From Macrostomum hystrix (taxonomy: Eukaryota; Animalia; Platyhelminthes), in the NCBI GenBank assembly GCA_950097015.1, contig CATNEN010000002.1, forward strand, positions 2,418,001 through 2,482,000: a DNA stretch of 64,000 bases. The letters run 5' to 3'. How positions within the stretch are numbered: the first letter of the stretch is position 1; every line of letters begins with the position of its first letter. Below the pieces are notes generated by a model. The model did not search any database and was not told where the DNA came from. It saw only the letters and a list, made by a program, of their open reading frames with translations. Shown piece by piece: positions 25,096-44,394 of the stretch. The translations under genes and the position numbers were made by a program.

Positions 25096-25245
25096 GGCAA
25101 CATGTGCTCACCGCCTGTGCTCAGCAGCGCACAGCAAAATCGATTATTGGCTTGTGGTGAAGTCGAGTCAACAACAACACAATTGAAAAAATACACTGTT
25201 GTTTGGCTTAAAGCGAAATAGTTTTTAGTCCCAATGACAAACTAC

Positions 25246-28200
25246 GCTTGTCACTCTGTCTCCTTGTCACTCTGTCTCCTTGTCACTCTGTCTCCTTGTC
25301 ACTCTGTCTCCTTGTCACTCTGTCTCCTTGTCACTCTGTCTCCTTGTCACTCTGTCTCCTTGTCACTCTGTCTCCTTGTCACTCTGTCTCCTTGTCACTC
25401 TGTCTGCTTGTCACTCTGTCTCCTTGTCACTCTGTCTGCTTGTCACTCTGTCTGCTTGTCACTCTGTCTCCTTGTCACTCTGTCTCCTTGTCACTCTGTC
25501 TGCTTGTCACTCTGTCTGCTTGTCACTCTGTCTCCTTGTCACTCTGTCTCCTTGTCACTCTGTCTGCTTGTCACTCTGTCTGCTTGTCACTCTGTCTCCT
25601 TGTCACTCTGTCTCCTTGTCACTCTGTCTGCTTGTCACTCTGTCTGCTTGTCACTCTGTCTGCTTGTCACTCTGTCTCCTTGTCACTCTGTCTGCTTGTC
25701 ACTCTGTCTGCTTGTCACTCTGTCTCCTTGGCACTCTGTCTCCGTGTCACTCTGTCTGCTTGTCACTCTGTCTCCTTGTCACTCTGTCTGCTTGTCACTC
25801 TGTCTCCTTGTCACTCTGTCTCCTTGTCACTCTGTCTCCTTGTCACTCTGTCCTCTTGTCACTCTGTCTCCTTGTCACTCTGTCTCCTTGTCACTCTGTC
25901 TGCTTGTCACTCTGTCTGCTTGTCACTCTGTATCCTTGTCACTCTGTCTCCTTGTCACTCTGTCTCCTTGTCACTCTGTCTCCTTGTCACTCTGTCCTCT
26001 TGTCACTCTGTCTCCTTGTCACTCTGTCTCCTTGTCACTCTGTCTGCTTGTCACTCTGTCTGCTTGTCACTCTGTCTCCTTGTCACTCTGTCTCCTTGTC
26101 ACTCTGTCCTCTTGTCACTCTGTCTCCTTGTCACTCTGTCTCCTTGTCACTCTGTCTCCTTGTCACTCTGTCCTCTTGTCACTCTGTCTCCTTGTCACTC
26201 TGTCTCCATGTCACTCTGTCTCCTTGTCACTCTGTCTCCTTGTCACTCTGTCCTCTTGTCACTCTGTCTCCTTGTCACTCTGTCCTCTTGTCACTCTGTC
26301 TCCTTGTCACTCTGTCTGCTTGTCACTCTGTCTCCTTGTCACTCTGTCTCCTTGTCACTCTGTCTCCTTGTCACTCTGTCTCCTTGTCACTCTGTCCTCT
26401 TGTCACTCTGTCTCCTTGTCACTCTGTCCTCTTGTCACTCTGTCTCCTTGTCACTCTGTCTGCTTGTCACTCTGTCTGCTTGTCACTCTGTCTCCTTGTC
26501 ACTCTGTCTGCTTGTCACTCTGTCTCCTTGTCACTCTGTCTCCTTGTCACTCTGTCTCCTTGTCACTCTGTCTCCTTGTCACTCTGTCTCCTTGTCACTC
26601 TGTCTCCTTGTCACTCTGTCCTCTTGTCACTCTGTCTCCTTGTCACTCTGTCCTCTTGTCACTCTGTCTCCTTGTCACTCTGTCTGCTTGTCACTCTGTC
26701 TCCTTGTCACTCTGTCTGCTTGTCACTCTGTCTGCTTGTCACTCTGTCTCCTTGTCACTCTGTCCTCTTGTCACTCTGTCTCCTTGTCACTCTGTCTGCT
26801 TGTCACTCTGTCTGCTTGTCACTCTGTCTCCTTGTCACTCTGTCTGCTTGTCACTCTGTCTCCTTGTCACTCTGTCCTCTTGTCACTCTGTCTCCTTGTC
26901 ACTCTGTCTGCTTGTCACTCTGTCTCCTTGTCACTCTGTCTCCTTGTCACTCTGTCTCCTTGTCACTCTGTCTCCTTGTCACTCTGTCCTCTTGTCACTC
27001 TGTCTCCTTGTCACTCTGTCCTCTTGTCACTCTGTCTGCTTGTCACTCTGTCTGCTTGTCACTCTGTCTCCTTGTCACTCTGTCCTCTTGTCACTCTGTC
27101 TCCTTGTCACTCTGTCTGCTTGTCACTCTGTCTCCTTGTCACTCTGTCTCCTTGTCACTCTGTCTGCTTGTCACTCTGTCTGCTTGTCACTCTGTCTCCT
27201 TGTCACTCTGTCTCCTTGTCACTCTGTCCTCTTGTCACTCTGTCTCCTTGTCACTCTGTCTCCTTGTCACTCTGTCTCCTTGTCACTCTGTCTGCTTGTC
27301 ACTCTGTCTGCTTGTCACTCTGTCTGCTTGTCACTCTGTCTCCTTGTCACTCTGTCTGCTTGTCACTCTGTCTCCTTGTCACTCTGTCTCCTTGTCACTC
27401 TGTCTCCTTGTCACTCTGTCTCCTTGTCACTCTGTCTCCTTGTCACTCTGTCTCCTTGTCACTCTGTCTCCTTGTCACTCTGTCCTCTTGTCACTCTGTC
27501 TCCTTGTCACTCTGTCCTCTTGTCACTCTGTCTCCTTGTCACTCTGTCTGCTTGTCACTCTGTCTCCTTGTCACTCTGTCTGCTTGTCACTCTGTCTGCT
27601 TGTCACTCTGTCTCCTTGTCACTCTGTCTCCTTGTCACTCTGTCTGCTTGTCACTCTGTCTGCTTGTCACTCTGTCTGCTTGTCACTCTGTCTCCTTGTC
27701 ACTCTGTCTCCTTGTCACTCTGTCTCCTTGTCACTGTCTGCTTGTCACTCTGTCCTCTTGTCACTCTGTCTGCTTGTCACTCTGTCTCCTTGTCACTCTG
27801 TCCTCTTGTCACTCTGTCTCCTTGTCACTCTGTCTGCTTGTCACACTGTCTGCTTGTCACTCTGTCCTCTTGTCACTCTGTCTGCTTGTCACTCTGTCTG
27901 CTTGTCACTCTGTCTGCTTGTCACTCTGTCTGCTTGTCACTCTGTCTCCTTGGCACTCTGTCTCCTTGTCACTCTGTCTCCTTGTCACTCTGTCTGCTTG
28001 TCACTCTGTCTCCTTGTCACTCTGTCTGCTTGTCACTCTGTCTGCTTGTCACTCTGTCTGCTTGTCACTCTGTCTCCTTGTCACTCTGTCTCCTTGTCAC
28101 TCTGTCTCCTTGTCACTCTGTCTCCTTGTCACTCTGTCTGCTTTTCACGCTGTCTGCTTGTCACTCTGTCTGCTTGTCACTCTGTCTCCTTGTCACTCTG

Positions 28201-28670
28201 TCTGCTTGTCACTCTGTCTGCTTGTCACTCTGTCCTCTTGTCACTCTGTCTCCTTGTCACTCTGTCCTCTTGTCACTCTGTCTGCTTGTCACTCTGTCTG
28301 CTTGTCACTCTGTCTGCTTGTCACTCTGTCTCCTTGTCACTCTGTCTCCTTGTCACTCTGTCTCCTTGTCACTCTGTCCTCTTGTCACTCTGTCTCCTTG
28401 TCACTCTGTCTCCTTGTCACTCTGTCTCCTTGTCACTCTGTCTGCTTGTCACTCTGTCTCCTTGTCACTCTGTCTGCTTGTCACTCTGTCCTCTTGTCAC
28501 TCTGTCTCCTTGTCACTCTGTCTGCTTGTCACTCTGTCTCCTTGTCACTCTGTCTGCTTGTCACTCTGTATCCTTGTCACTCTGTCTGCTTGTCACTCTG
28601 TCTCCTTGTCACTCTGTCTGCTTGTCACTCTGCCTCCTTGTTACTCTTTCCTATTGTCACTGTCTTATAA
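25246..28670. repeat. 16-bp satellite (CTTGTCACTCTGTCTC)n, ~3.4 kb, about 210 units
   Basis: Continuous array with three main variants (CTCC, CTGC, CCTC). The three >1100-aa ORFs are artefacts. Confidence 0.98.
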
Positions 28671-28690
28671 TGACAGGTAGAGTGAGAATA

Positions 28691-28911
28691 GAAGAGGTTG
28701 TAGCCTTGTGGTTAGGGCGTCAGACTTACGACTTGAAGCTCGGGGGTTCGATTCCCGACTCCACTGGAACAATTTGTGTCCTTTAGCAAGACACTTAACT
28801 CTGCATTGCTAAAGTTCATCCAGCTGTTAAATTGGCCCAATTAGTTAATAAATTATTATTGTCACTCTGTACCCTTGGCCCTTTGTATTTTACAGCAAAT
28901 AAATAAATAAA
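28691..28911 (+). mobile_element. tRNA-derived SINE family 1, near full length, with CORE-like domain and (AAAT)n tail
   Basis: A box TAGCCTTGTGG and B box GGTTCGATTCC, then TGTGTCCTTTAGCAAGACACTTAACTCTGC...CAGCTGTTAAATTGG; ends in AAATAAATAAATAAA. Confidence 0.8.
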
Positions 28912-30909: not shown

Positions 30910-32777
30910 TTAGTCTCTGTCAAAGCAGTTCATGATTTCTCGGAACTGCAGCAGGCCCGGCTCGGCGCTGATGCCGCCAGTGGCCGAGGACAGCAGAGCC
31001 CCGGCCTCGCCAGTCAGCAGCTTGCGAAAAAGATCCTCGTTGAGGGTCACCTTCACGTCAGGCTTCGGCTTGAGGCCCGTGTTGACGAGGTCCACGATGC
31101 CCTCGCGGATGTGGAATCTGTGTTATCCAATTTGAATATCAAAAGCGCATCTTTCCATCTCTGAGTTTTGGTGCTTGCTGATGGGCTAAATATTATTCTC
31201 AGTAAACTCCCAATCACCACCTACCTTATGACCTTCTCAGAATCCGGAAAGTTGAACTCAACGAGTTTATCCAGATGGCTGCAATCCTCAAAGTTGAATC
31301 GATAGCGAAACATCTGGAATAGCGTCTCCAGATTCACGGAGAAGATTGTCCGAGAGCGCACGTCCTTCCGCAGGCTGGTGTCAATCTTGCCCAGCTCTTC
31401 ATAGGCGCAGGTGGTGTAGTAGTTGTAGCCGTTGGCACTAATCTGACCAGCAGCCAGTTCGAAGATGGCCTTCACTTTCAGCTCACGAGCGGGAGTTGAA
31501 GTCGGGCTCGCTCGCAGAGCAGCTGACGCCAGCTGAAGCGCCCACTGAAAGTCGCTTTTGGCCAGAGCGTCAGAGGCGGCTGTTAAAATTTTGTCTTCGC
31601 CGCCAGCCAGCTGCACCAGCCGCACCGCCTGCTGCTCTGTGCTCAATGGGCTCAGCTCCTCTGCGTAGCCGCTGAACCAGCCGAGGTAGCCGGCAAAGAG
31701 ACCCTTCACGGACCATGCCACGGTGCCGTAGAACTCCTGGAGGTAATCGTGCTCTGCAAGTCGCTTAGTTAGGCTCACCTTTTGCGCGATGTCGTCTGGA
31801 TGCAGTCCGCGATTCATCCAACGCACCGTCTGGTCGTGCACCGTCTGCACAGCATCCCTGTAGGTCAGCAGAAGCTCTCTGATCTGCTTCTTGCCGACGA
31901 TCGGCCGCGTGTGACTGGGCACCAGGTATTCAGCATTTAGGGCGTTCATGCGGTCCAACGACTCGGTCCACAACTCCAGGCTACGAAACGGGGTGCCACG
32001 GATGGCGTACAGGTTAGGGAAAGCCTTGTACACATCATCAGCGCAGAAGAGTGCCTGCTTCTCTGGCCAGTAGACAGCAATCTGATCGTCAGTTTCGCCA
32101 GGTATATGCATCAGCTTCAGCTTTAGTCCAGCGATGGTTACATCCGCCTCGGCAGTGTCCAAGAACCGGTTTGGAGGGACAAAGCCTGAGCGGAACTGCT
32201 TCCGGCCGAAGTTGAGGCCGAAGCCGATGCCCGAGTTTGGTGTGTTTTCTCGCTCAATAAGTGCCCCAAATTGTCTCATCGCGCGCTTGTAGATGACGGG
32301 CCCTGTAACGTAGTTTGTGAGACGGAAGATTTCCATAAGGCTCCGATGGGACCAGATATGCACCGATGAGTTGCCTTCGACGTCTTTCAGGAACGCTTCA
32401 GCTCCGTTCACATGGTCTTGATGGTTGTGAGTATAGACGATTGCCTTCACGGGTGACTTTGTGACTTTTCGGAAGGCTTCGTAAATGAGCTCTGCGGCTT
32501 CCATGGACTCTACCGTGTCGATGATGATGGCTCCTTCGGGTGCCTCAATAAGTATTGAGTTGGCCAGAGCGTAACCTATGGCGACGTAGATGCCCTCCGT
32601 AACCCTCAGCACTTCGGGTTTGTTAAACTCGTTGGCATGTGTCTTGAGCTTTCTGGCATTGTTAGTGTTGGCTCTGCCGTATTCGACTATGCGCTCCACG
32701 GACCGATGCTCTTGCCACTTTGAGCCCACAATGTAGGCAATGAGAGCCACGCAAAGGATACGGAATATGCGCTCCAT
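30910..32777 (-). CDS. Alkyl/aryl sulfatase, SdsA1/BDS1 family (metallo-beta-lactamase, dimerisation and SCP2-like domains)
   Basis: Motifs THNHQDH, PGETDDQ, ADDVYKAFPNLYAIRGT, LVPSHTRP and EFYGTVAWSV...YLGWFSG. ATG at 32777 followed by a hydrophobic N-terminal anchor. Exons 32777-31225 and 31117-30910 (donor GTAGGT, acceptor AACACAG); the last exon encodes FHIREGIVDL...PDVKVTL...FREIMNCFD. Confidence 0.9.
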
Positions 32778-35023
32778 GTTGAAAATTATCTTCTTGAGCA
32801 CTGACTAGTCCGAGGTGAAGACCTCATTGAAAGGGTGTGAAACCGCTTCTTTATGGGCGAAGATTTTGCTTATATATTTGTATTCTTTGCAACGAACTTT
32901 GACCAGCGTCAGATATTTTGCTCAGTATATTTGGTTCGTTTGAAGGTTGCTACTCAAGCAGGTCAAGTGATTTACAGCCGATAAAGGTGGGCGTACTCAG
33001 AATTCAAGTTTCATATACAACTAAACTACCCTCATTGCTCGAGCCTTAAAACAGATTGTCTATCTCAAAAGATATATCTCTATCTCTAAAGAGAAGTACA
33101 TTAAATTATACAGTGAATTGAAGAGTCGAAGTTCAAGCCTGGCTAGAAAAGAAGCGCACATTTGACGTTAAACGGGCAGCAAATAAAATGCATAAAGTTT
33201 CATAGAATGGGCGGTCCGGTTACATCGAGGTGCGTGCCTGCAAGGCCATATCTAGAAAATGATAGCCTAGAGTTGTACATAAGGTGCGTTCAAGTGCTCG
33301 GTAAGCAATGCCATCTAGGAGTCGTTTGCCACTACTAGAGGGACTCCTACGGTAGTTGAATTTTTGTGCGCCTTTTGGTACTGGGTAAATTGTGCACTGA
33401 AAAACAACTGTCGCTAGTCCGTCTGTCTACCAGGAGCCATCTAAAGCCTGTCCCTAATCCCCGAAATGATGTAGATTCTGCCTGCGCCCTTTGGCGATTC
33501 GACCGCTCGGACCAGATCCCCCACGGCCTCGACTGTTCGTCTTTCATACCTCCCCTTGATGGCCTCTTTTTCCCTGTCTCTGCGCAAACTAAACCAATTA
33601 AAGTATCTTCGATTCAATTGGCCACTGATTAAGCGGTTGGCCCAGGCAGCCAAGTCAATTAACGAGTTGGTAACGCGGGAAGAAGAACGATTTCCTGGAA
33701 AAGTTGGGAAATCCAGAGCTCATCACGAATTCCCGCGGGAACTGGGATGCATCTTTTTCTGTCTGCAGCCCGGTCTGTCTGAGAGGCCAGCGATTGCTTG
33801 GACACTCAAGTCCATCAGCAGTCCATCACGCTGCAATGTTTGCACTGTCAGACACTGTATTCGGACTAGAGTTTCTGGGGAGCCGCTATCTCCTGATAGA
33901 CCCATGGGAAGTGAATGAAGTTCGATCGCAATCATTTTCAGGTGAAGTTCGTGATGCTTGCTCGTAGATGCTTCCGTTCTGCCAGAGCCGGAGAGATCTA
34001 GAGATCTAGAGATATAGAGAAACTATGAAGGGAGAAGGAGAGATAGAGAGTGGTGGAGTGCCCATGCGGGCTAAGCGCCACTTTCGCAAAGTGCCTTCCT
34101 CCACTTTCGCAAACGCGGTCCAAATCCGCATCTGGACCTTCCACTTCCTCTTTTTCTCCTTCGCCCCACCCAATGCGCCATAACTCCCAAATATTTTCTT
34201 CATTTCGGACCGTCCCTTTGCTTCTGCGCAAATCGCGGACCATCGAGACCGCACAATATAGAATTTTTCGAGAGTTTTCTCTTCTCTCTTCATAAATCTG
34301 GGCCAGCTTCCTCCACCTTATTATATGGTCTGTTAGTATTAGTGTGTTCGCGATAGCGGGGCAAGTGTGGCATAGTGTAGCAAAAAGTAGCGGAGGCTCT
34401 GCGTGTCAAAATAAATCCTTCGCCTCATTTCACCCCAAGTACAGACGGTGCAGGCAAGGGCAAGCAAGCGAAAGAATAGAATCCCGGTAGCGAGGCCAGC
34501 CAAGCACCAGTATTGTGATTGATTCGACTCTGATCTACAAACCCGTTAAATGGGGCCTTCGCGCTAAATCGACAAGATCTCTGCTGCTCGATCTATCTCT
34601 GACTCGACAAAAAGTGTGCGGCTTGTGTTAAACTGGCTTTTAATTTCGCCCCGCACCGTCATTCGTTATCGGCTTCTTCGGCTCAGCAGCTATCCAGCAT
34701 ATTTTCCTGTCTATGCAGCATCTTCGACAGAGACGAACTGCGCCCTTATCTAGCAGCAGAACTCCGGACCTACCGCCCTTGGGATATTGATCAGGCTCTC
34801 CATCAGGCCAGCCAGTCACAAGCTAGACCCAAAACTCCCCTCTAAGACTGAGCGTCCTTCCCGTGCCAATCGGTCCAAAGCCTCAGCCACTCCTTCCTCG
34901 GCACTTTATCAGTTGCTAGCCTATTTAGATAGGCCCTCCTAACTCTCAGCCTACGAGGTCCTAGTTCCACCTATTAGGCAACTGTCTTTCTTATCCGCTC
35001 TGTTGCAATCCATTGAAAACCGG

Positions 35024-37228: not shown

Positions 37229-37470
37229 GGGTTCAGTGGCCTAGTAGTAACAAGTCCGACACTAGGACCAAGGTCCGGAGCTCGAATCTACGGCCATCCA
37301 GATTTATTTGGCGCGCAGGAAATCATGTTCGAAAAAAATATGACAGAGAATGCGGGGTGTAATCAAGGAGTTGATTTCTTCAGGGCCGTGAGGGTGAGAG
37401 TGATAGTAGTGTACACAGCCTGACTTCCAGTGTACAGACCTGTGTGAGTGCGCGTTTGGAGGGCTGATCA
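37229..37470 (+). mobile_element. tRNA-derived SINE family 2 copy
   Basis: CAGTGGCCTAGTAG...ACCAAGGTCCGGAGCTCGAATC...ATTTGGCGCGCAG...GTGTACACAGCCTGAC...TGTACAGACCTGTGTGAG; homologous to 49093-49310. Confidence 0.65.
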
Positions 37471-37473
37471 ATA

Positions 37474-37908
37474 GTGTTGAGAACAGGGTTGAGAACAGAG
37501 TTGGCAACTGTGTTGAGAACAGGGTTGAGAGCAGTGTTGAGAACAGTGTTGAGAGCAGGGTTGAGAACAGGGTTGAGAACAGAGTTGGCAACTGTGTTGA
37601 GAACAGGGTTGAGAGCAGTGTTGAGAACAGTGTTGAGAGCAGGGTTGAGAACAGTGTTGAGAACAGTGTTGAGAACAGGGTTGAGAACAGTGTTGAGAAC
37701 AGTGTTGAGAGCAGGGTTGAGAACAGTGTTGAGAACAGTGTTGAGAACAGGGTTGAGAACAGTGTTGAGAACAGTGTTGAGAACAGAGTTGAGAACAGTG
37801 TTGAGAACAGTGTTGAGAACAGAGTTGAGAACAGTGTTGAGAACAGTGTTGAGAACAGAGTTGAGAACAGTGTTGAGAACAGAGTTGAGAACAGAGTTGA
37901 GAACAGTT
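37474..37908. repeat. 12-bp tandem repeat (GTTGAGAACAGT)n
   Basis: About 36 units starting immediately 3' of the SINE family 2 copy. Confidence 0.95.
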
Positions 37909-39615
37909 TCGCAAACATTAGGGTATTGGGGTGAGTGTTAAAGAGCTACTATAAGAAGAAAAGTGGCTGAGCCACTCGAAGTGCTCAGCGTACTTGGTCC
38001 TTTAACTATGCTCAGAGGTCAGCGGAATGAGCAAAATTCCTTCTCACTGGCTGTGGCTTGACTGTCGCCAAATAGAGCTCCAGTGACCGCAGCCCCCGTC
38101 AATGAGTTTTGTTAAGCAGCGAAAGTCAAGCATCTTTCTGTTTTGTTTAACTCGGTGAACTTAGAGCCAAAATTCGAAATACCGAGACCGGATGATTTGC
38201 TTAACTCCCTCACTGTCCCCCAACGCAAGGCTAATCCTATAATCCCCTGGGATTTGAGTCCAATCTGCATATCCATGGCAACGGAGATGTGTTTGCTGCT
38301 CATCTGCCGGCTTTAGATTTGGCTAATGGATGTGCTTAGGAATCAGCTAGAATTAATTTCCCTTTCAAACAACTTTTTCCACTACGATACTTTTTCCACT
38401 GATTCTGAATCGGCTTCTGGCTTCATGATCACGAAAGGACCCAGTTTCTGGACATTGCTCTGCGGAATGTAGCGATTCGATATTCATCATGAACCAGCTG
38501 ATCGGATGACTCAAGTGTCTTCTTCCAGTGAGATGAAAGTCTGTCTCACGAGTAACTTGAAAAGAATTAGAAAATCGCAACATTCTTCAATAGTCAATTT
38601 CGCTGTTGTTAAGCTGTATAAAAAAGTTTTTCATTTACTGAGCCTCCAAGCAAACATGCCATTATTGGCCAACAGTATATCGGATTAGTAAAGGTTGAGG
38701 GCACAAACTGGACGCTAGAAAAAAGAATTAACGCTATAGTCTATGGTAATAAGCACTCGGAAAGAAAGAGACTAATATTAGTAGTAATATAGTGGAATAT
38801 CAAAACCAACACAGAAACTGGAAATAAATAGGGTTGACAAAATATTTATTGATTAGTTATTGATTTGATCATTGAAAGTAAACTTAAAGACTGGAGTAAA
38901 ACAAATATTATCAGAGTCTACTTACAGCACTATCTGGAGTAAATTTGTTATTATTTAACAGTAGAGAGACAGTGGGGGTTAATTCAAATACCCACATTTT
39001 TAGTTTTTCTGAATCTCCCAAAATATTCAAGCAATCGCTATGAAAATCCCGAATCTGGCTAAAATTTTCCGCTCTAACCGATTAAACAACTCCCGGAATC
39101 AGAAAACATCGGCATCGTCGAGATATTCAACGATTGTCGTCGGAGCGTCTGGTGGCAAGAGACACAAATATAGACATATTTTTCTGCTAACAGAATTTCA
39201 TCATGTAACCATGTCACCTATCATTGTTTACTATTGTGGATTGATGAAACATTTTTTTTCATTTTAAACACGTTTGCATTCCCAATAGAGTTTATTCAGT
39301 GCAATTTTAGTTGTCCTTGCCCCCCTGAAGTCTCGGACAAGATCTGCTGAATACTTCACTGATGCGGACTTGGATAGCTTCGAAAGTTCATCGTTAGGGG
39401 CGGAAAATGTTGATTCAGGTGGTGGAATTTCACATAGATTGGTCATTTGGTTTGGGATCAATCGTGAAGAATGCAGTGGGTATTCTAAATACCACCGGGT
39501 CTTTCTGCATGGGAAAAGTTTTACTGTTAAAGTGCAACATAAGACTATAGCTAACAAAGTCAAAGATGCAATCGTTAGATTCAGCAAAAAGCTTTCAAGC
39601 TTTCCGGTTTCTCTG

Positions 39616-41000
39616 TCAGTGGTTCAACTTTTCTCTCACCCGTTGAATGTTCTTTTCGTCGTTCGTCTCCATGACAATGCGTCTCTCGTCCCTGATGGTC
39701 TCAATCTGCTGCAGACAAAACTGCACGTGTAAGCGCTGGTCGCTGTAGTGAGCCAGAGTGAGCAGCTCCTCCAGGTCCGGGTCGTCTTGCAGCTCTGACA
39801 GCCACGCATCAAAGTCGATGCCTTCAGCAGTGCGGAGCCGCTCAGCTTGCAGGCTCCAGATCAGGCAGCGGAAGTTCACGTACAGGTGAGATGCGCGAGG
39901 ATGCGACAGTCTGGCTGTGAGCAAAGTCCGCATGAACTCGGGAATGAACGGAAAGCTCGGTGGAGTGTCGGCCGGGAGGCAGAACCTCCACGCCCAGTCC
40001 GAGTCAGTGCGATCGAAGTCTCGGTGTTTGATCTCAGCCGGCTCCCAGCCTCTCTTGACTTTGTGATGCAGCAGAGCCATCAGGTGCGCATCGGCTTTTC
40101 CGCAGCGATGGAACTTCAAATGCGCCATGACGGTCAAGCAGACGGCTGCGCACTTGCACCAGGGCAGCCCACGGATGAGCTCGATCTGCTTCATCAAGGC
40201 TTCTTCGTCACAAAATTCAGATTGCAGCTCAGTCAGACAATGGTACACAATGCTGTACACATCTAGGCACCTCTCCGAAAATTCATTGCGTCCATCTCGG
40301 ACTTGGGAAGCCACGGGCGGCTGCGTCAGCGGTAACAGAGTAAACAGATGGAAATAAAATCTCTTAGACTTCAACGGTTCCAACTGGCTCATCATCAGCG
40401 TCAACACTACACCACTGTCGTCTCTCAGCTCACTCAGTCGGTCTCGCACCTTCCGCTTCGTGTTTTCGAACTCTCCTCTGATTCCTGCGTTCTTGAAGTA
40501 TATAGGAGCGTCAGGCATGAAGAAGTGCGGCATGCACTCATCGGGCGAGCTGCTGGAGTCGATGAAGCTCAGCATCATGTCGAGGGACTCCTCCAGCAGA
40601 GCCACCAGATTCTGTGGCTGCCACGCTTCGTTTGCGTCGCCGAGGTGCTTCTCCAGCATGAAGAAGAGCAGAGTCTTGGCATGGTAGGTCTTGAGTCCAG
40701 GCGTTGCCAGGAAGAGAGGCAAATATCTCTTGAAGATGAACTTGATCAGTACAAAGAGCTGGCCTTGAACTGTACTCAGGCTTCGCATGATCTTCTTCTC
40801 ATGGAAACTGAAGCTGACCCTGAACTCGTTTCTCTGATTCGGCCTTGTTGCTCGGACCAGGTGGACGAATATGAGTGGGCAGGCGGGCAGCAGTGTCTTC
40901 GTCCTGAGAGGGCAGAGTCCGCTGCAGCACTGCATCGCTTGGCAGATGTCTAGTGAGGGCCGGGAGCCACTGGCAGGAGTTGACACTGCAGGCTGGCTGC
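39616..41000 (-). CDS. Ankyrin-Mab21/cGLR gene, exon 3 (Mab-21 C-terminal lobe plus helical tail)
   Basis: Acceptor TTAATCAG at 41001. Mab-21 hallmarks SLDICQAM, EFRVSFSFHEKKIM, LIKFIFK, LKTYHAKTLLF, WQPQNL, CMPHFFMP. Stop at 39616. Confidence 0.88.
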
Positions 41001-41340
41001 CTGATTAATTATTAATTTTCGTCAAACAGGCATTTTTTCAAACGAAGTTTGACAAATTGCTTGCTAGATTATAATTTTTGCCAACTCAATGCATTTCCCC
41101 CTTATTTGCCACCTTCAGCTCATTAAGTTTCTAACTCAGAAAATACATTTTGACGGGGAAATATCTTAGCTCCGGGAGCTAATTTACTAGCTAAGGTAAA
41201 TAAGGTGGGAATTTCAGTAAATATATTTTCTTTACTCTTCCTTCTAAAGAGGCTAAATTTGCTAGTCTTCGTTTCCAAACGCACAGTTCTAAATCTGAAT
41301 ATGATGGTGCAGCCTCAATTGCAGGTCTCATCAGACTCAC

Positions 41341-41702
41341 CAGATCCGACTGGCACAATGGCGTGGCCTTGTATAACCTTCAGCCTGACGGCATCGTAAC
41401 AGCTGATCTCGCTCCGTCCGTTGCAGCCGCCATCCAGATGAAATCGCTGTCTTGCTTCTAGCACAGTCCAGTCAATGTCGGAGTCTGCCGCGGTCCTGCC
41501 GTTCACCTGCTGCAGGTTGTTGGCCCAGCCCTCCGCGAAGCTGCCCGTGATCTGCCTGTCATCATGAGCCAGGACTCGAGCGACTCCTTCCAGACTGTCA
41601 GCCAGCTGCTGCAGACAGCGGGCCCGCTCCTCAGTGAATCCTGACTCGCGGAGCAGCGAAGACAGATCGATAACTGGCCTTTGCTCCGATTTTGGAGGGG
41701 AC
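41341..41702 (-). CDS. Ankyrin-Mab21/cGLR gene, exon 2 (nucleotidyltransferase catalytic motifs)
   Basis: ITGSFAEGW...DSDIDWTV (G-S plus D-x-D). Acceptor TGCAG at 41703 (phase 2); donor GTGAGT at 41340 (phase 1). Confidence 0.88.
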
Positions 41703-41915
41703 CTGCACTTAAAAAAAGGCAAGATTTTGGTGATAAAATTCAGGCATTGCTTTTGCGTTAACTCGACAAAAAGACAAAGTTACTTGCGGTTCGATCAGTC
41801 ATTTGTAGTTAGTTTAAGTAAACAGTCATATATACATTTTTACACTTTCTCTCTGTGCAATTTATCTCTGTAAACACAGCTAAGCCAGCTATATTTTATG
41901 TACATGCGCTCGTAC

Positions 41916-43150
41916 CTGAGAATCCTGCAATGCTCTCGACAAGCTGTGGACTCGCGGATTTCATTTGGCTCATCTCGCTGACCCAACTTGGCTCCTCGGT
42001 CTGTGGGAGCCTTGGAGGCTCTGGCGTGACCCGCTGTGCGAGCTCGCAACAATGCCGTCCGACCTACGACATCCTCAGCATCCACTGACGCACCGACGTC
42101 CAGCAGCTGCTCGATGAGCTCATGGTGTCCTTCGTCCGCTGCCAGCATGAGCGCTGTGGACCCGCTGCTGTCTCGCAGGTCGATGTTTTCGCAGCTGAGT
42201 TTTCCACAGTCGATAAGAGTTGCAGCCAGTGGAACGTGGCCGCGTCTGATGGAGAGGCAGAGCAGCTGTGCCACCTGAGCTGGCTGCATCTGAGCCAGAG
42301 TGCAATCCAGGATTGAGTTGTCCCCAGAGACGGTAAGGTGCGAGAGCAAGGCGAGCAGGGGAGAGTCCTTCGTGAGCCAGTCCGGTGGAATGGCTGCGGC
42401 ATCAGCTGACGGGTCTCTACTTGAGTACTGAGCAGCTGCTCTCGTGTTGAGAATGGCATTCAGAGTTGAGCAGCTCATATTGGCTGCTGCGGATTTGCAG
42501 AGGCTGGACCAAACAGCTTCTTCTAGCTCCTTGTCAGCAATTGCGTTGGCAAAGTACTTCATCATTGGCCACTTGAAATGAGCAGCTGCACTCACGGCTG
42601 CCTTGAAGCAGAGCTTCTCTCTAAGATGGTGATCGGAGATCCTCAGCATGAGGTATTTTACTACGTGCCACCTGCTCTTAGCTGTCGCCGTGTCCGCCGC
42701 CTTCAAGCAGCTCTGGTCTCGAGTATTCGCGTCAGCGATTGCCTGAACAAAAAAGGTCACGAAGCTGAATGGAGCCCGACCCGCTGCATCGACCAAAGCA
42801 TCTCGACAGAATCCGTCTCTGCTTGGTTGATCAGCGATCGTGTCCACACAATCTTGTTTGGATCTCCACGTGGCGATTTCATTTTTCGGGAAACGTTCCG
42901 ATTCATCAGTTAGTCTGAGCTCGCTCCAAACACTCTGGGCCTGGCCTGTTCGTAGCTGAGGGAAATCCAGAAATGAGCGACTTATCACATGAGATTCGGG
43001 CATTTCGTTCTGTTCATAAGATGGATGATCTTCTTCATCTTCATGAACATCTGCATCGCAAGATTCATAGGTTTGTTTCATAGGTTTCAGAGGCGATAGG
43101 CCGTATATTCTTGACCGTTTCACTGATGCTTTTCCGATGCTGTTTCCCAT
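41916..43150 (-). CDS. Ankyrin-Mab21/cGLR gene, exon 1 (ankyrin repeats)
   Basis: GSTALMLAADEGHHELIEQLLDVGASVDAEDVVGRTAL is a canonical ANK repeat, preceded by degenerate helical repeats. Donor GTACGA at 41915, phase 2. Spliced CDS is 2982 nt (993 aa). Confidence 0.85.
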
Positions 43151-43619
43151 TTTTCTTAGAAGTCTTACTTTCTTGTCGCCTCGTGCTGTGAATCAGGTTT
43201 TTGTGTTGAACTCTAGTATGATTTGTATAATAATATAACATTGACATCTCTGAGATCCTTGAATTAGCTGTCTTCAAGATGTGAGAGACAGCATTGGTGG
43301 GCAAGGGTTTCTTTCTCAAGTTCGAACAATGTGCTGGGGTACCTGAAAAGCTTTCTCGGTTCGTGGAGTATGCTATTTCTGTGCACCTGCTAGTCGAGCG
43401 TTAAAGGCGAGTAAAAGAAAAAGAAAAATAGCCAATTTCTATCCAGCGCATTTCCAGGAATTTTCCGCGGATTTTCCGTTAGCTAATTATAGCAATGGCT
43501 ATGCGCTCAACAGTCCTTTAACGGACAAAGAACTTTTTTGACCAACTGGGTTTAGCAGTTTGTCAGACCTGCATTGGTATTCGTGGTGTTAGCTGGTGTT
43601 GGTGGATTAATAAGATAAC

Positions 43620-43975
43620 AGTGAACAAGCGGACAGATTCAGCTGTGAATAAATGAATTGGTGAATGGGTAAATAGGTACATAGGTGAATAGGTGCATAG
43701 GTGAATAGGTGAACACATACAAGCTGTGAACAGGTGAACAGATACAAGCTGGGAATAAGTGAATAGGTGAATAGGTAAATAGGTACATAGGTCAATAGGT
43801 GAACAGATTCAAGCTGTGAATAAGTGAATTGGTGAATAGGTAAATAGACACATACAAGCTGTGAACAGGTGAACAGATACAAGCTGTGAACAGGTGAACA
43901 GACACAAGCTGTGAACAAGTGAACAGATACAAGCTGTGAACAGGTGAACACATACATGCTGTGAACAGGTGAATA
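43620..43975. repeat. GTGAACAG / GTGAATAG-rich minisatellite
   Basis: Repeated GTGAACAGGTGAACAGATACAAGCT units. Confidence 0.85.
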
Positions 43976-44394
43976 GCCTGCTGAAGTGGACATTGGTAAT
44001 GGGCGAGGCTGCACAATTCTGAATTTAGTCAGAAATTTTTGTCATTTTTCCTTCATAGTCCTGGCGAGGTTCTTGTCCAGGATGACTGTCGCAGGACCAA
44101 GACAATATCTAGCATCTATATTTAGTCGAGAGTGTCAATTGGGGATTATGCGAATAGCGGTAGCAACAAGTTAGATTTACTCATAAACATTCTCAAAAGC
44201 ATTTATTGATTGCTGCAAGAACTTTGTTGGCAACTTAAAACGCAGTTGTTTCGCTCAATTCATATTGTTTTAGATGAGATAATGTATTTCATAATCAAAA
44301 ATTACCAGACAATTAAATTTCAAACCGAGTACATTATGTAAAGGTATATTTCGTGCCACTTCGGCTTTCTTGTGTACTTTTCTTTATCAGCCAA

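What the first reader, a model, noticed from the sequence alone, without database searches (positions are those of the whole stretch)
39616..43150. Ankyrin-repeat-fused cGAS-like receptor (cGLR) with an intact catalytic triad
Seen: three phase-compatible exons join into a 993-aa protein. It begins MGNSIGK, then has ankyrin and degenerate helical repeats, then a Mab-21 NTase (GSFAEG...DSDID...SLDIC, i.e. GS + DxD + third Asp), then a ~200-aa helical tail. No cGAS zinc thumb is evident. Established: Mab-21/cGAS-like receptors make cyclic dinucleotides in animal innate immunity. Inference: this is an active, possibly N-myristoylated sensor in which the ankyrin repeats rather than nucleic-acid binding control activation, perhaps by recognising a pathogen protein. 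The ligand and second messenger are unknown. The ORF track splits the gene into three pieces and hides the fusion.
Basis: partly seen in the sequence, partly recalled or inferred. Interest (0 to 1): 0.78.

Follow-up and report, generated by a model that had tools for sequence, protein, structure and literature searches.

The report
Flatworm ankyrin-fused cGAS-like enzyme gene
This is a real, expressed three-exon flatworm gene that joins ankyrin repeats to a cGAS-like signalling enzyme with its catalytic residues intact, but the same fusion family from Macrostomum was already catalogued in 2023, so it is a new member of a known kind whose trigger and product remain unknown.

Summary
Three minus-strand exons (43150-41916, 41702-41341, 41000-39616) join in frame through GT-AG introns into a 993-aa protein. 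Public contigs skip exactly both introns, so the ankyrin exon and the enzyme exons lie on one spliced transcript.

The protein has:
- a Met-Gly start followed by a polybasic stretch;
- about five degenerate plus four recognisable ankyrin repeats;
- a roughly 260-aa helical tail with no clear structural relative.

It meets the published cGLR active-site motif literally (ITGS, 20 residues, DIDW, 58 residues, LDI). It has no zinc thumb and is not basic.

The fusion is not new. Li et al. 2023 list ankyrin-cGLR fusions, include Macrostomum lignano members in their domain table, and cloned close paralogues without the ankyrin part. None of those is among their 15 selected active enzymes. This scan has about 39 cGLR notes in the same genome, several on ankyrin-cGLR fusions.

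What I add: the enzyme-plus-tail module appears confined to Macrostomum (69 representatives among 1.84 billion), and most paralogues keep the catalytic set.

Activity, ligand, product and receptor are untested. Verdict: new member of a known kind, modest interest.

The parts
41916..43150 (-). Exon 1 (coding from ATG 43150): N-terminal region plus ankyrin repeats, aa 1-411 and two bases of codon 412
   Evidence: ORF; donor CAG|GTACG; contig joint 41702/41916 in run X1
41703..41915 (-). Intron 1 (213 nt, GT-AG)
   Evidence: Joint 'skips 213', CT..AC on the + strand; sequence
41341..41702 (-). Exon 2: linker and first half of the NTase core (GS loop, DxD strand)
41001..41340 (-). Intron 2 (340 nt, GT-AG)
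   Evidence: Joint 'skips 340' in runs X1, X3 and X4 with 0 mismatches; depth 0 over 41008-41275 in all four runs
39616..41000 (-). Exon 3 coding part (stop at 39616-39618): third catalytic Asp, helical lobe (Mab-21_C), tail
43130..43150 (-). MGNSIGK, an N-myristoylation-type start; followed by a polybasic stretch (aa 2-25, net +6; 43076-43147)
   Evidence: Sequence; MGQNxS / MGNQNS starts in P0022, P0023, P0027, P0061
42371..42865 (-). About five degenerate 33-aa ankyrin-derived repeats (aa 96-260)
   Evidence: 33-aa register; no Pfam hit when scanned alone; BLASTP E 3e-16, and a register-shifted alignment at 1e-14, to the N-terminal repeats of P0027, which score as Ank_2
41975..42370 (-). 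About four recognisable ankyrin repeats (aa 261-392)
   Evidence: Pfam Ank_2 1.9e-10, Ank 2.8e-7
40393..41668 (-). cGAS-like nucleotidyltransferase domain (aa 424-735, interrupted by intron 2)
41540..41551 (-). ITGS (aa 463-466), the activation-loop motif
41468..41479 (-). DIDW (aa 487-490), the metal-binding acidic pair at the start of strand beta2
40945..40953 (-). LDI (aa 549-551), the third catalytic Asp (D550)
39619..40392 (-). C-terminal tail domain (aa 736-993): helices plus a small three-stranded sheet, restricted to the family
   Evidence: AF2 model of the window's own sequence, pLDDT 86, pTM 0.87; no clear structural relative; 69 representatives only, and all ten sampled are M. lignano
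43151..43396 (-). 5' untranslated region (at least this far)
   Evidence: Contigs collinear with the genome across the ATG up to 43396; in-frame stop upstream
39400..39615 (-). 3' untranslated region (at least this far; the laid stretch ended at 39400)
   Evidence: Contigs at 39400-39766

Best explanation
The locus is one expressed three-exon gene of a Macrostomum-type flatworm. It encodes a 993-aa ankyrin-cGLR fusion and belongs to a large clade, seen so far only in Macrostomum, whose architecture is already catalogued. Proposed mechanism (inferred): the N-terminus is myristoylated and, with its polybasic stretch, holds the protein at a membrane. The array of about nine ankyrin-type repeats binds a non-nucleic-acid ligand, either a pathogen protein or a modified host protein. 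Binding releases or organises the cGAS-like domain. That domain then uses D487/D489/D550-bound metal ions and the ITGS loop to make a cyclic di- or oligonucleotide from NTPs. A STING-type receptor reads the signal. The conserved 260-aa tail packs on the enzyme and probably regulates it or mediates assembly. Shown here: gene structure, splicing, expression, fold, motif, and family distribution. Inferred: enzymatic activity, ligand, product, receptor, lipidation. My confidence in the gene and family identity is about 0.95. The figure below is for the mechanism as a whole.
Against: No activity data exist for this protein. Li et al. cloned five M. lignano relatives, two of them close to this protein, as constructs without the ankyrin part. 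They tested them with poly I:C and 45-bp dsDNA, and none carries an 'active' label in Table S3. This fits a missing ligand or a missing ankyrin domain, but equally fits an inactive enzyme. The NTase fold was modelled on a homologue, because intron 2 splits the window's own domain and no reference for the joined protein was available. The exon 1-exon 2 joint rests on one contig in one run. The runs' library type is not on record, so RNA is inferred from intron-free coverage. Only a minority of family members begin with Met-Gly.
Confidence: 0.5

Rival explanations
1. It is a conventional nucleic-acid-sensing cGLR. The NTase domain itself binds dsRNA or dsDNA, and the ankyrin repeats serve only for localisation or for recruiting downstream partners.
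For: dsRNA and dsDNA are the only known cGLR ligands and are widely shared among animals. The fold superposes on the whole cGAS catalytic domain.
Against: NTase pI is 7.7, and 6.6 with the tail, against >8.5 for known nucleic-acid sensors. There is no zinc thumb. Close paralogues tested without the ankyrin part, with poly I:C and dsDNA, are not among the 15 labelled active enzymes.
Confidence: 0.2
2. It is an active nucleotidyltransferase whose product is not a STING-directed cyclic dinucleotide. Examples would be linear 2'-5' oligonucleotides, as made by OAS, or nucleotidylation of a protein or RNA. Its role might not be immune.
For: The catalytic set is shared by the whole Pol-beta NTase superfamily, so the fold alone does not fix the product. 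The extra tail domain has no known counterpart. Li et al. found several cGLR products they could not identify.
Against: The closest structural matches are cGAS and MB21D2 rather than OAS. The gene-family radiation resembles that of immune cGLRs in oysters and corals.
Confidence: 0.15
3. It is a pseudo-enzyme or scaffold. The NTase fold is kept for binding, as proposed for Mab21L1, and signalling runs through protein-protein contacts of the ankyrin and tail domains.
For: Four paralogues (P0013, P0020, P0045, P0046) have lost two acidic residues together and still persist. None of the five M. lignano relatives cloned in the 2023 screen is among the 15 labelled active enzymes.
Against: This protein, and 27 of 31 informative relatives, keep every catalytic residue across 40-60% sequence divergence. 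That pattern is expected only if catalysis is under selection.
Confidence: 0.12
4. It is a gene-model artefact: two adjacent genes (an ankyrin protein and a stand-alone cGLR), or a pseudogene.
For: The exon 1 reading frame runs 25 codons past the donor to a stop, so an ankyrin-only product is conceivable. The exon 1-exon 2 joint is seen in only one contig.
Against: That contig joins 41916 to 41702 exactly at GT-AG. No contig is seen inside intron 1. The frame is open through all 993 codons. Dozens of independently annotated M. lignano proteins have the same ankyrin-NTase-tail order.
Confidence: 0.03

Closest known systems
Macrostomum lignano ankyrin-cGLR proteins in Li et al. 2023 (e.g. PAA68676.1 = BOX15_Mlig016402g1 = P0027; PAA93208.1)
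   Same: Same order of ankyrin repeats, NTase and tail. Same near-invariant signature around the GS loop and the DSDID strand. A myristoylation-type start in P0027. Identity is 50-52% over the full length and 62-64% over NTase plus tail.
   Different: The window's protein is not in the protein collection and lies outside the recent 22-member M. lignano expansion, grouping weakly with P0004. It is therefore another species' copy or an older paralogue line. Its distal repeats are more degenerate and give no Pfam hit when scanned alone.
Human/mouse cGAS
   Different: Only 17-20% identity. No zinc thumb: three residues link the two helices where cGAS has its insertion. No basic N-terminus, and a near-neutral domain. 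The loop between GS and the acidic pair has 20 residues. Ankyrin repeats and a 260-aa tail are added.
Stylophora pistillata ankyrin- and death-domain-fused cGLRs (Li et al. 2023, Fig. 4C)
   Same: A cGLR core fused to ankyrin repeats, in an animal with a radiated cGLR repertoire. The ligand is unknown.
   Different: Different phylum. I could not compare sequences. There is no evidence that the corals share the Macrostomum tail domain: the tail profile's hits whose source I looked up (ten of the new representatives, plus the named hits) are all M. lignano, apart from two unnamed JGI proteins.
MB21D2 and MAB21L1 (human Mab-21 family)
   Same: Same fold and the same Mab-21_C helical lobe.
   Different: Per Li et al., the Mab21L1/2/3 group lacks a predicted functional active site and acts in development. 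The window protein has the full motif and belongs to a radiated clade confined to one genus.

Membership tests
cGLR (criteria of Li et al. 2023) | Active-site motif h[QT]GS X8-20 [DE]h[DE]h X50-90 h[DE]h | tested here: met
   I-T-G-S (463-466), 20 residues, D-I-D-W (487-490), 58 residues, L-D-I (549-551)
cGLR (criteria of Li et al. 2023) | Homology across both the NTase core and the C-terminal helix bundle | tested here: met
   Mab-21_C scores 27.3 bits against a cut-off of 24.1. The NTase core is not seen by Pfam PF03281, even in contiguous homologues. It is covered by the structural match to cGAS 161-521 and by the weak sequence match to cGAS.
cGLR (criteria of Li et al. 2023) | Predicted structural homology to cGAS / CD-NTases | tested here: met
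cGLR (function) | Ligand-dependent synthesis of a nucleotide second messenger | not testable with these tools
Close paralogues were cloned by Li et al., and none is among their 15 labelled active enzymes.
cGAS proper (dsDNA sensor) | Zinc thumb H(X5)CC(X6)C between the core and the helical lobe | tested here: not met
   No insertion in the alignment. Model helices 178-186 and 190-210 are joined by three residues.
cGAS proper (dsDNA sensor) | Basic ligand-binding surface (pI >8.5 for nucleic-acid-sensing cGLRs) | tested here: not met
   NTase domain pI 7.7, NTase plus tail 6.6, whole protein 6.3. This is a bulk pI, not a surface map.
Ankyrin-repeat proteins | Match to ankyrin-repeat profiles above threshold | tested here: met
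   Ank_2 41.6 bits (cut-off 27.3) and Ank 30.9 bits (cut-off 21.1) at aa 298-376. The distal repeats are only homologous to Ank_2-scoring repeats of P0027.
N-myristoylated proteins | Met-Gly start fitting G-{EDRKHPFYW}-x-x-[STAGCN]-{P} (PROSITE-type consensus, quoted from memory) | tested here: met
   G2-N3-S4-I5-G6-K7, followed by a +6 polybasic stretch. The lipid modification itself is not testable here.
Mab21L1-type non-catalytic Mab-21 proteins | Absence of a complete catalytic motif | tested here: not met
   The motif is complete, so the protein is not filed here.

The most novel reading that the evidence does not exclude
This could be a membrane-tethered cGLR that senses a protein or other non-nucleic-acid ligand through its variable ankyrin array. 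A tail domain confined to Macrostomum would act as the switch or assembly module, and the signal would go to the unusual soluble double-STING proteins reported elsewhere in this genome. That would be an NLR-like, protein-sensing branch of cGAS-STING immunity in a phylum long thought to lack the pathway.
Probability: 0.2. Interest if true: 0.7.

Novelty: new member of a known kind. Interest (0 to 1): 0.3.

Why it matters
No ankyrin-fused cGLR has a known ligand or product, and the only known cGLR triggers are dsDNA and dsRNA. Macrostomum is a transgenic, RNAi-amenable flatworm with dozens of these genes. That makes the family a practical place to look for a non-nucleic-acid cGLR trigger. This particular gene adds three things. 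It is a cleanly confirmed gene model in a second genome. It hints at membrane anchoring. And it shows that the enzyme always travels with a 260-aa tail domain found only in this genus. It does not change what is known about the family.

Tried and rejected
- One search used the wrong frame for exon 3, which begins with two bases of a split codon. It was redone.
- Piecewise Pfam scans cannot see the N-terminal NTase half. Contiguous homologues (P0003, P0027) also fail to hit PF03281 at E 0.01, so I relied on structure.
- The exon 2 piece alone gave only chance PDB sequence matches.
The NTase fold was therefore tested on P0003, and only the tail on the window's own sequence.
- (profile A1 against P0018) is circular, because P0018 is a row of A1. 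I discarded it.
- No paralogue and no obvious signalling partner lies in the window.
- I did not verify the STING genes reported by earlier notes, because they lie outside the window and I had no STING query sequence.
- The tree is the quick version with long branches, so the pairing with P0004 is tentative.
Full report
**Observation**

Read on the minus strand, exon 1 ends CAG|GTACG at 41916. Exon 2 starts after TTTTTAAGTGCAG at 41702 and ends CTG|GTGAGT at 41341. Exon 3 starts after TTAATCAG at 41000. Joined, they give 2982 nt with one terminal stop, so 993 aa. A stop lies 13 codons upstream of the ATG at 43150, in frame. A tblastn of the product against the window finds only the gene itself, so there is no paralogue nearby.

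**Transcript evidence**

Four small public runs from one study and one coded organism hold parts of the stretch. I laid them on 39400-43400.
- Contigs in three runs skip exactly 41001-41340, with no mismatches and 46-66 nt on the shorter side.
- One contig in one run skips exactly 41703-41915, with 58 nt on the shorter side. It joins the ankyrin exon to the first NTase exon.
- Depth is zero over 41008-41275, inside intron 2, in all four runs.
- Contigs run collinear with the genome across the ATG up to 43396, and past the stop down to 39400. These are the UTRs.

The library type is not on record. I infer RNA from the intron-free, spliced coverage. The depth of the exact-match contigs is low (3-6). 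Contigs that are 90-95% alike pile up at 100-300 over the most conserved NTase pieces, which indicates more strongly expressed paralogues.

**Domains by sequence**

Pfam finds Ank_2 (41.6 bits, cut-off 27.3) and Ank at aa 298-376, and Mab-21_C (27.3 bits, cut-off 24.1) at about aa 634-696. The best PDB sequence match of exon 3 is cGAS itself, but weakly (E 0.05). The Pfam NTase model PF03281 is not hit, even by contiguous homologues.

Residues 96-260 show a plain 33-aa period. They give no Pfam hit when scanned alone. They align at E 3e-16, and again in a shifted register at 1e-14, to the N-terminal repeats of the M. lignano protein P0027. That region does score as Ank_2. The array is thus about five degenerate plus about four recognisable ankyrin repeats.

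**Relatives**

A word search with exon 3 found 18 proteins. Fifteen are M. lignano, two are unnamed JGI proteins, and one is a distant bivalve Mab-21 protein. A second search, set to admit longer proteins, found 50 clusters at 90% identity, up to 1374 aa. All named ones are M. lignano, and nearly all carry Ank, most with Mab-21_C as well.

Identity of the window protein to these is at most about 52% over the full length and 62-64% over NTase plus tail. None is the window's own product. The genome is therefore most likely another Macrostomum species, or this gene is an old paralogue line. A quick ML tree puts the protein with P0004, outside a recent 22-member M. lignano expansion, but on long branches.

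By domain, identity to the nearest relatives is as follows:

| Region | Identity |
|---|---|
| Helical lobe | about 78% |
| NTase core | 62-66% |
| Tail | about 57% |
| Recognisable ankyrin repeats | 54-58% |
| Distal repeats | about 28% |

**Fold**

Intron 2 splits the window's NTase domain, so I modelled P0003 (residues 17-659), with the family and the window pieces as alignment rows. The model is confident: pLDDT 83, pTM 0.83.
- Foldseek's top 50 PDB hits are all cGAS, MB21D2 or MAB21L1 (E about 4e-7, probability 1.0).

Mapped through the alignment, window G465-S466 sit at the turn from strand beta1 into a helix. D487 and D489 open strand beta2. D550 lies on the neighbouring strand. Where cGAS has its zinc thumb, three residues link two helices.

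**Membership**

Li et al. 2023 define cGLRs by three criteria: the motif h[QT]GS X8-20 [DE]h[DE]h X50-90 h[DE]h, homology over both lobes, and predicted structural homology to cGAS. The window protein reads ITGS, 20 residues, DIDW, 58 residues, LDI. All three criteria are met, the third by proxy.

It is not a cGAS orthologue. It has no zinc thumb, and the NTase pI is 7.7, against >8.5 for known nucleic-acid-sensing cGLRs. In the family alignment, 27 of 31 informative rows keep GS, both Asp of the pair and the third Asp. Four paralogues have lost two acidic residues together. This pattern suggests that catalysis is under selection in most members, including this one.

**The tail**

Residues 736-993 lie wholly in exon 3, so I folded the window's own sequence (aa 730-993). 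The model has pLDDT 86 and pTM 0.87: a helical bundle with a small three-stranded sheet. The searches gave nothing convincing:
- Foldseek against PDB: best E 0.2.
- The Atlas fold search: TM 0.5 or less, to TPR proteins.
- A tail profile against the bivalve Mab-21 protein: nothing.

Since the family scans left the tail open, I ran the exhaustive profile search. Only 69 representatives among 1.84 billion match at E 0.001 or better. Every non-fragment among the new hits has the family's NTase directly upstream of the tail. All ten representatives I looked up, including the two weakest, are M. lignano. NTase plus tail is thus one module that, in this collection, is confined to Macrostomum.

**N-terminus**

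MGNSIGK fits the usual myristoylation consensus, which I quote from memory. Residues 2-25 carry six basic and no acidic residues, a layout like the myristate-plus-basic membrane anchors of Src-type proteins (my own knowledge). P0022, P0023 and P0027 begin MGQN[LQ]S, and P0061 begins MGNQNS. Most other complete models do not begin Met-Gly. Lipidation is plausible, not shown.

**What is already known**

Li et al. 2023 (bioRxiv 10.1101/2023.02.22.529553, PMC9980059) say the following:
- 87% of about 3000 cGLRs are single-domain, and ankyrin- and TPR-fused forms exist.
- A coral has ankyrin- and death-domain-fused cGLRs.

Their domain table lists Ank_2 in M. lignano proteins, including PAA68676.1. 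Their cloning table has five M. lignano proteins, rows 89-93. Rows 92 and 93 share this protein's signature, and row 93 is P0027. The constructs start just before the NTase, so the ankyrin repeats were left off. The column that labels the 15 active enzymes is empty for all five rows. That shows they were not selected, not that they are inactive. The authors themselves say many cGLRs look inactive in vitro, probably for want of the right ligand. I found no later paper on ankyrin-cGLR function.

Earlier notes of this scan list about 39 cGLR findings in this genome. Three follow-ups reach the same conclusion about the 2023 catalogue, which I checked myself. The notes also report soluble double-STING genes about 6.5 Mb away, which I could not check.

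**How it most likely works**

Shown: one spliced, expressed gene; an ankyrin array; a cGAS-like domain with a complete, conserved catalytic set; a tail specific to the family.

Inferred: the ankyrin array, or the array together with the tail, holds the enzyme off until a ligand binds. The ligand is more likely a protein or other non-nucleic-acid molecule than dsRNA or dsDNA, given the neutral domain and the fast-diverging distal repeats. The enzyme then makes a cyclic nucleotide signal for a STING-type receptor, and the protein may sit on a membrane.

The rivals, with my odds, are:
- a conventional nucleic-acid sensor whose ankyrin repeats act as an adaptor (0.2);
- an NTase with another product or role (0.15);
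- a pseudo-enzyme (0.12);
- a gene-model artefact (0.03).

**Verdict**

The mechanism is untested. The kind is already catalogued, so this is a new member of a known kind. The genus-restricted NTase-plus-tail module and the possible membrane anchor are modest additions.

Noticed in passing
window 43645-43973: A compound tandem repeat (units of 8, 25, 50 and 65 nt built on GTGAATAG / GTGAACAG...ATACAAGCT) lies about 500 nt upstream of the gene's ATG, beyond the last transcript contig (43396). It gives the spurious repetitive minus-strand ORFs at 43563-44016.
   Followed up: partly
window 37473-37907: A 12-nt unit (AGTGTTGAGAAC) is repeated 36 times at 88% match. It is open in ORFs on both strands (37304-37918 minus, 37474-37941 plus).
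   Followed up: no
window 31221-32801 (-): An uninterrupted 526-aa ORF has metallo-beta-lactamase and alkyl-sulfatase dimerisation domains (E 1.6e-20 and 7e-35). An intron-free enzyme gene of a mostly bacterial type is unusual in an animal genome. Its origin was not examined.
   Followed up: partly
window 25234-28786 (+): ORFs of 1140-1168 aa are open in all three plus-strand frames over the same 3.5 kb. Base skew there is extreme (AT skew -0.75, GC skew -0.42) and there is no Pfam hit. This is probably a long simple-sequence tract rather than a gene.
   Followed up: partly
window 39668-39935, 40472-40605, 41410-41543: Contigs only 90-95% alike pile up at summed depth of about 35-310, by bin and run, on the most conserved NTase pieces. 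Exact-match contigs of this gene have depth 3-6. Paralogues seem far more strongly expressed than this copy.
   Followed up: no
P0020 (M. lignano, 1185 aa), P0016, P0053: Some family gene models carry extra domains. P0020 has protein-kinase domains behind ankyrin, NTase and tail, and has lost two catalytic acids. P0016 has a tail fragment followed by a kinase domain. P0053 has Ig domains plus a tail fragment. These could be real fusions or merged gene models.
   Followed up: no
P0010, P0015 (JGI contigs of 3238 and 2867 nt): Two family members come from JGI metagenome contigs without an organism name. They are presumably flatworm DNA in environmental samples, and are the only hits not labelled M. 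lignano.
   Followed up: no
window 41840-41915 (-): The exon 1 reading frame continues 25 codons into intron 1 before a stop, so intron retention would give a 436-aa ankyrin-only protein. No contig lies within the intron.
   Followed up: partly
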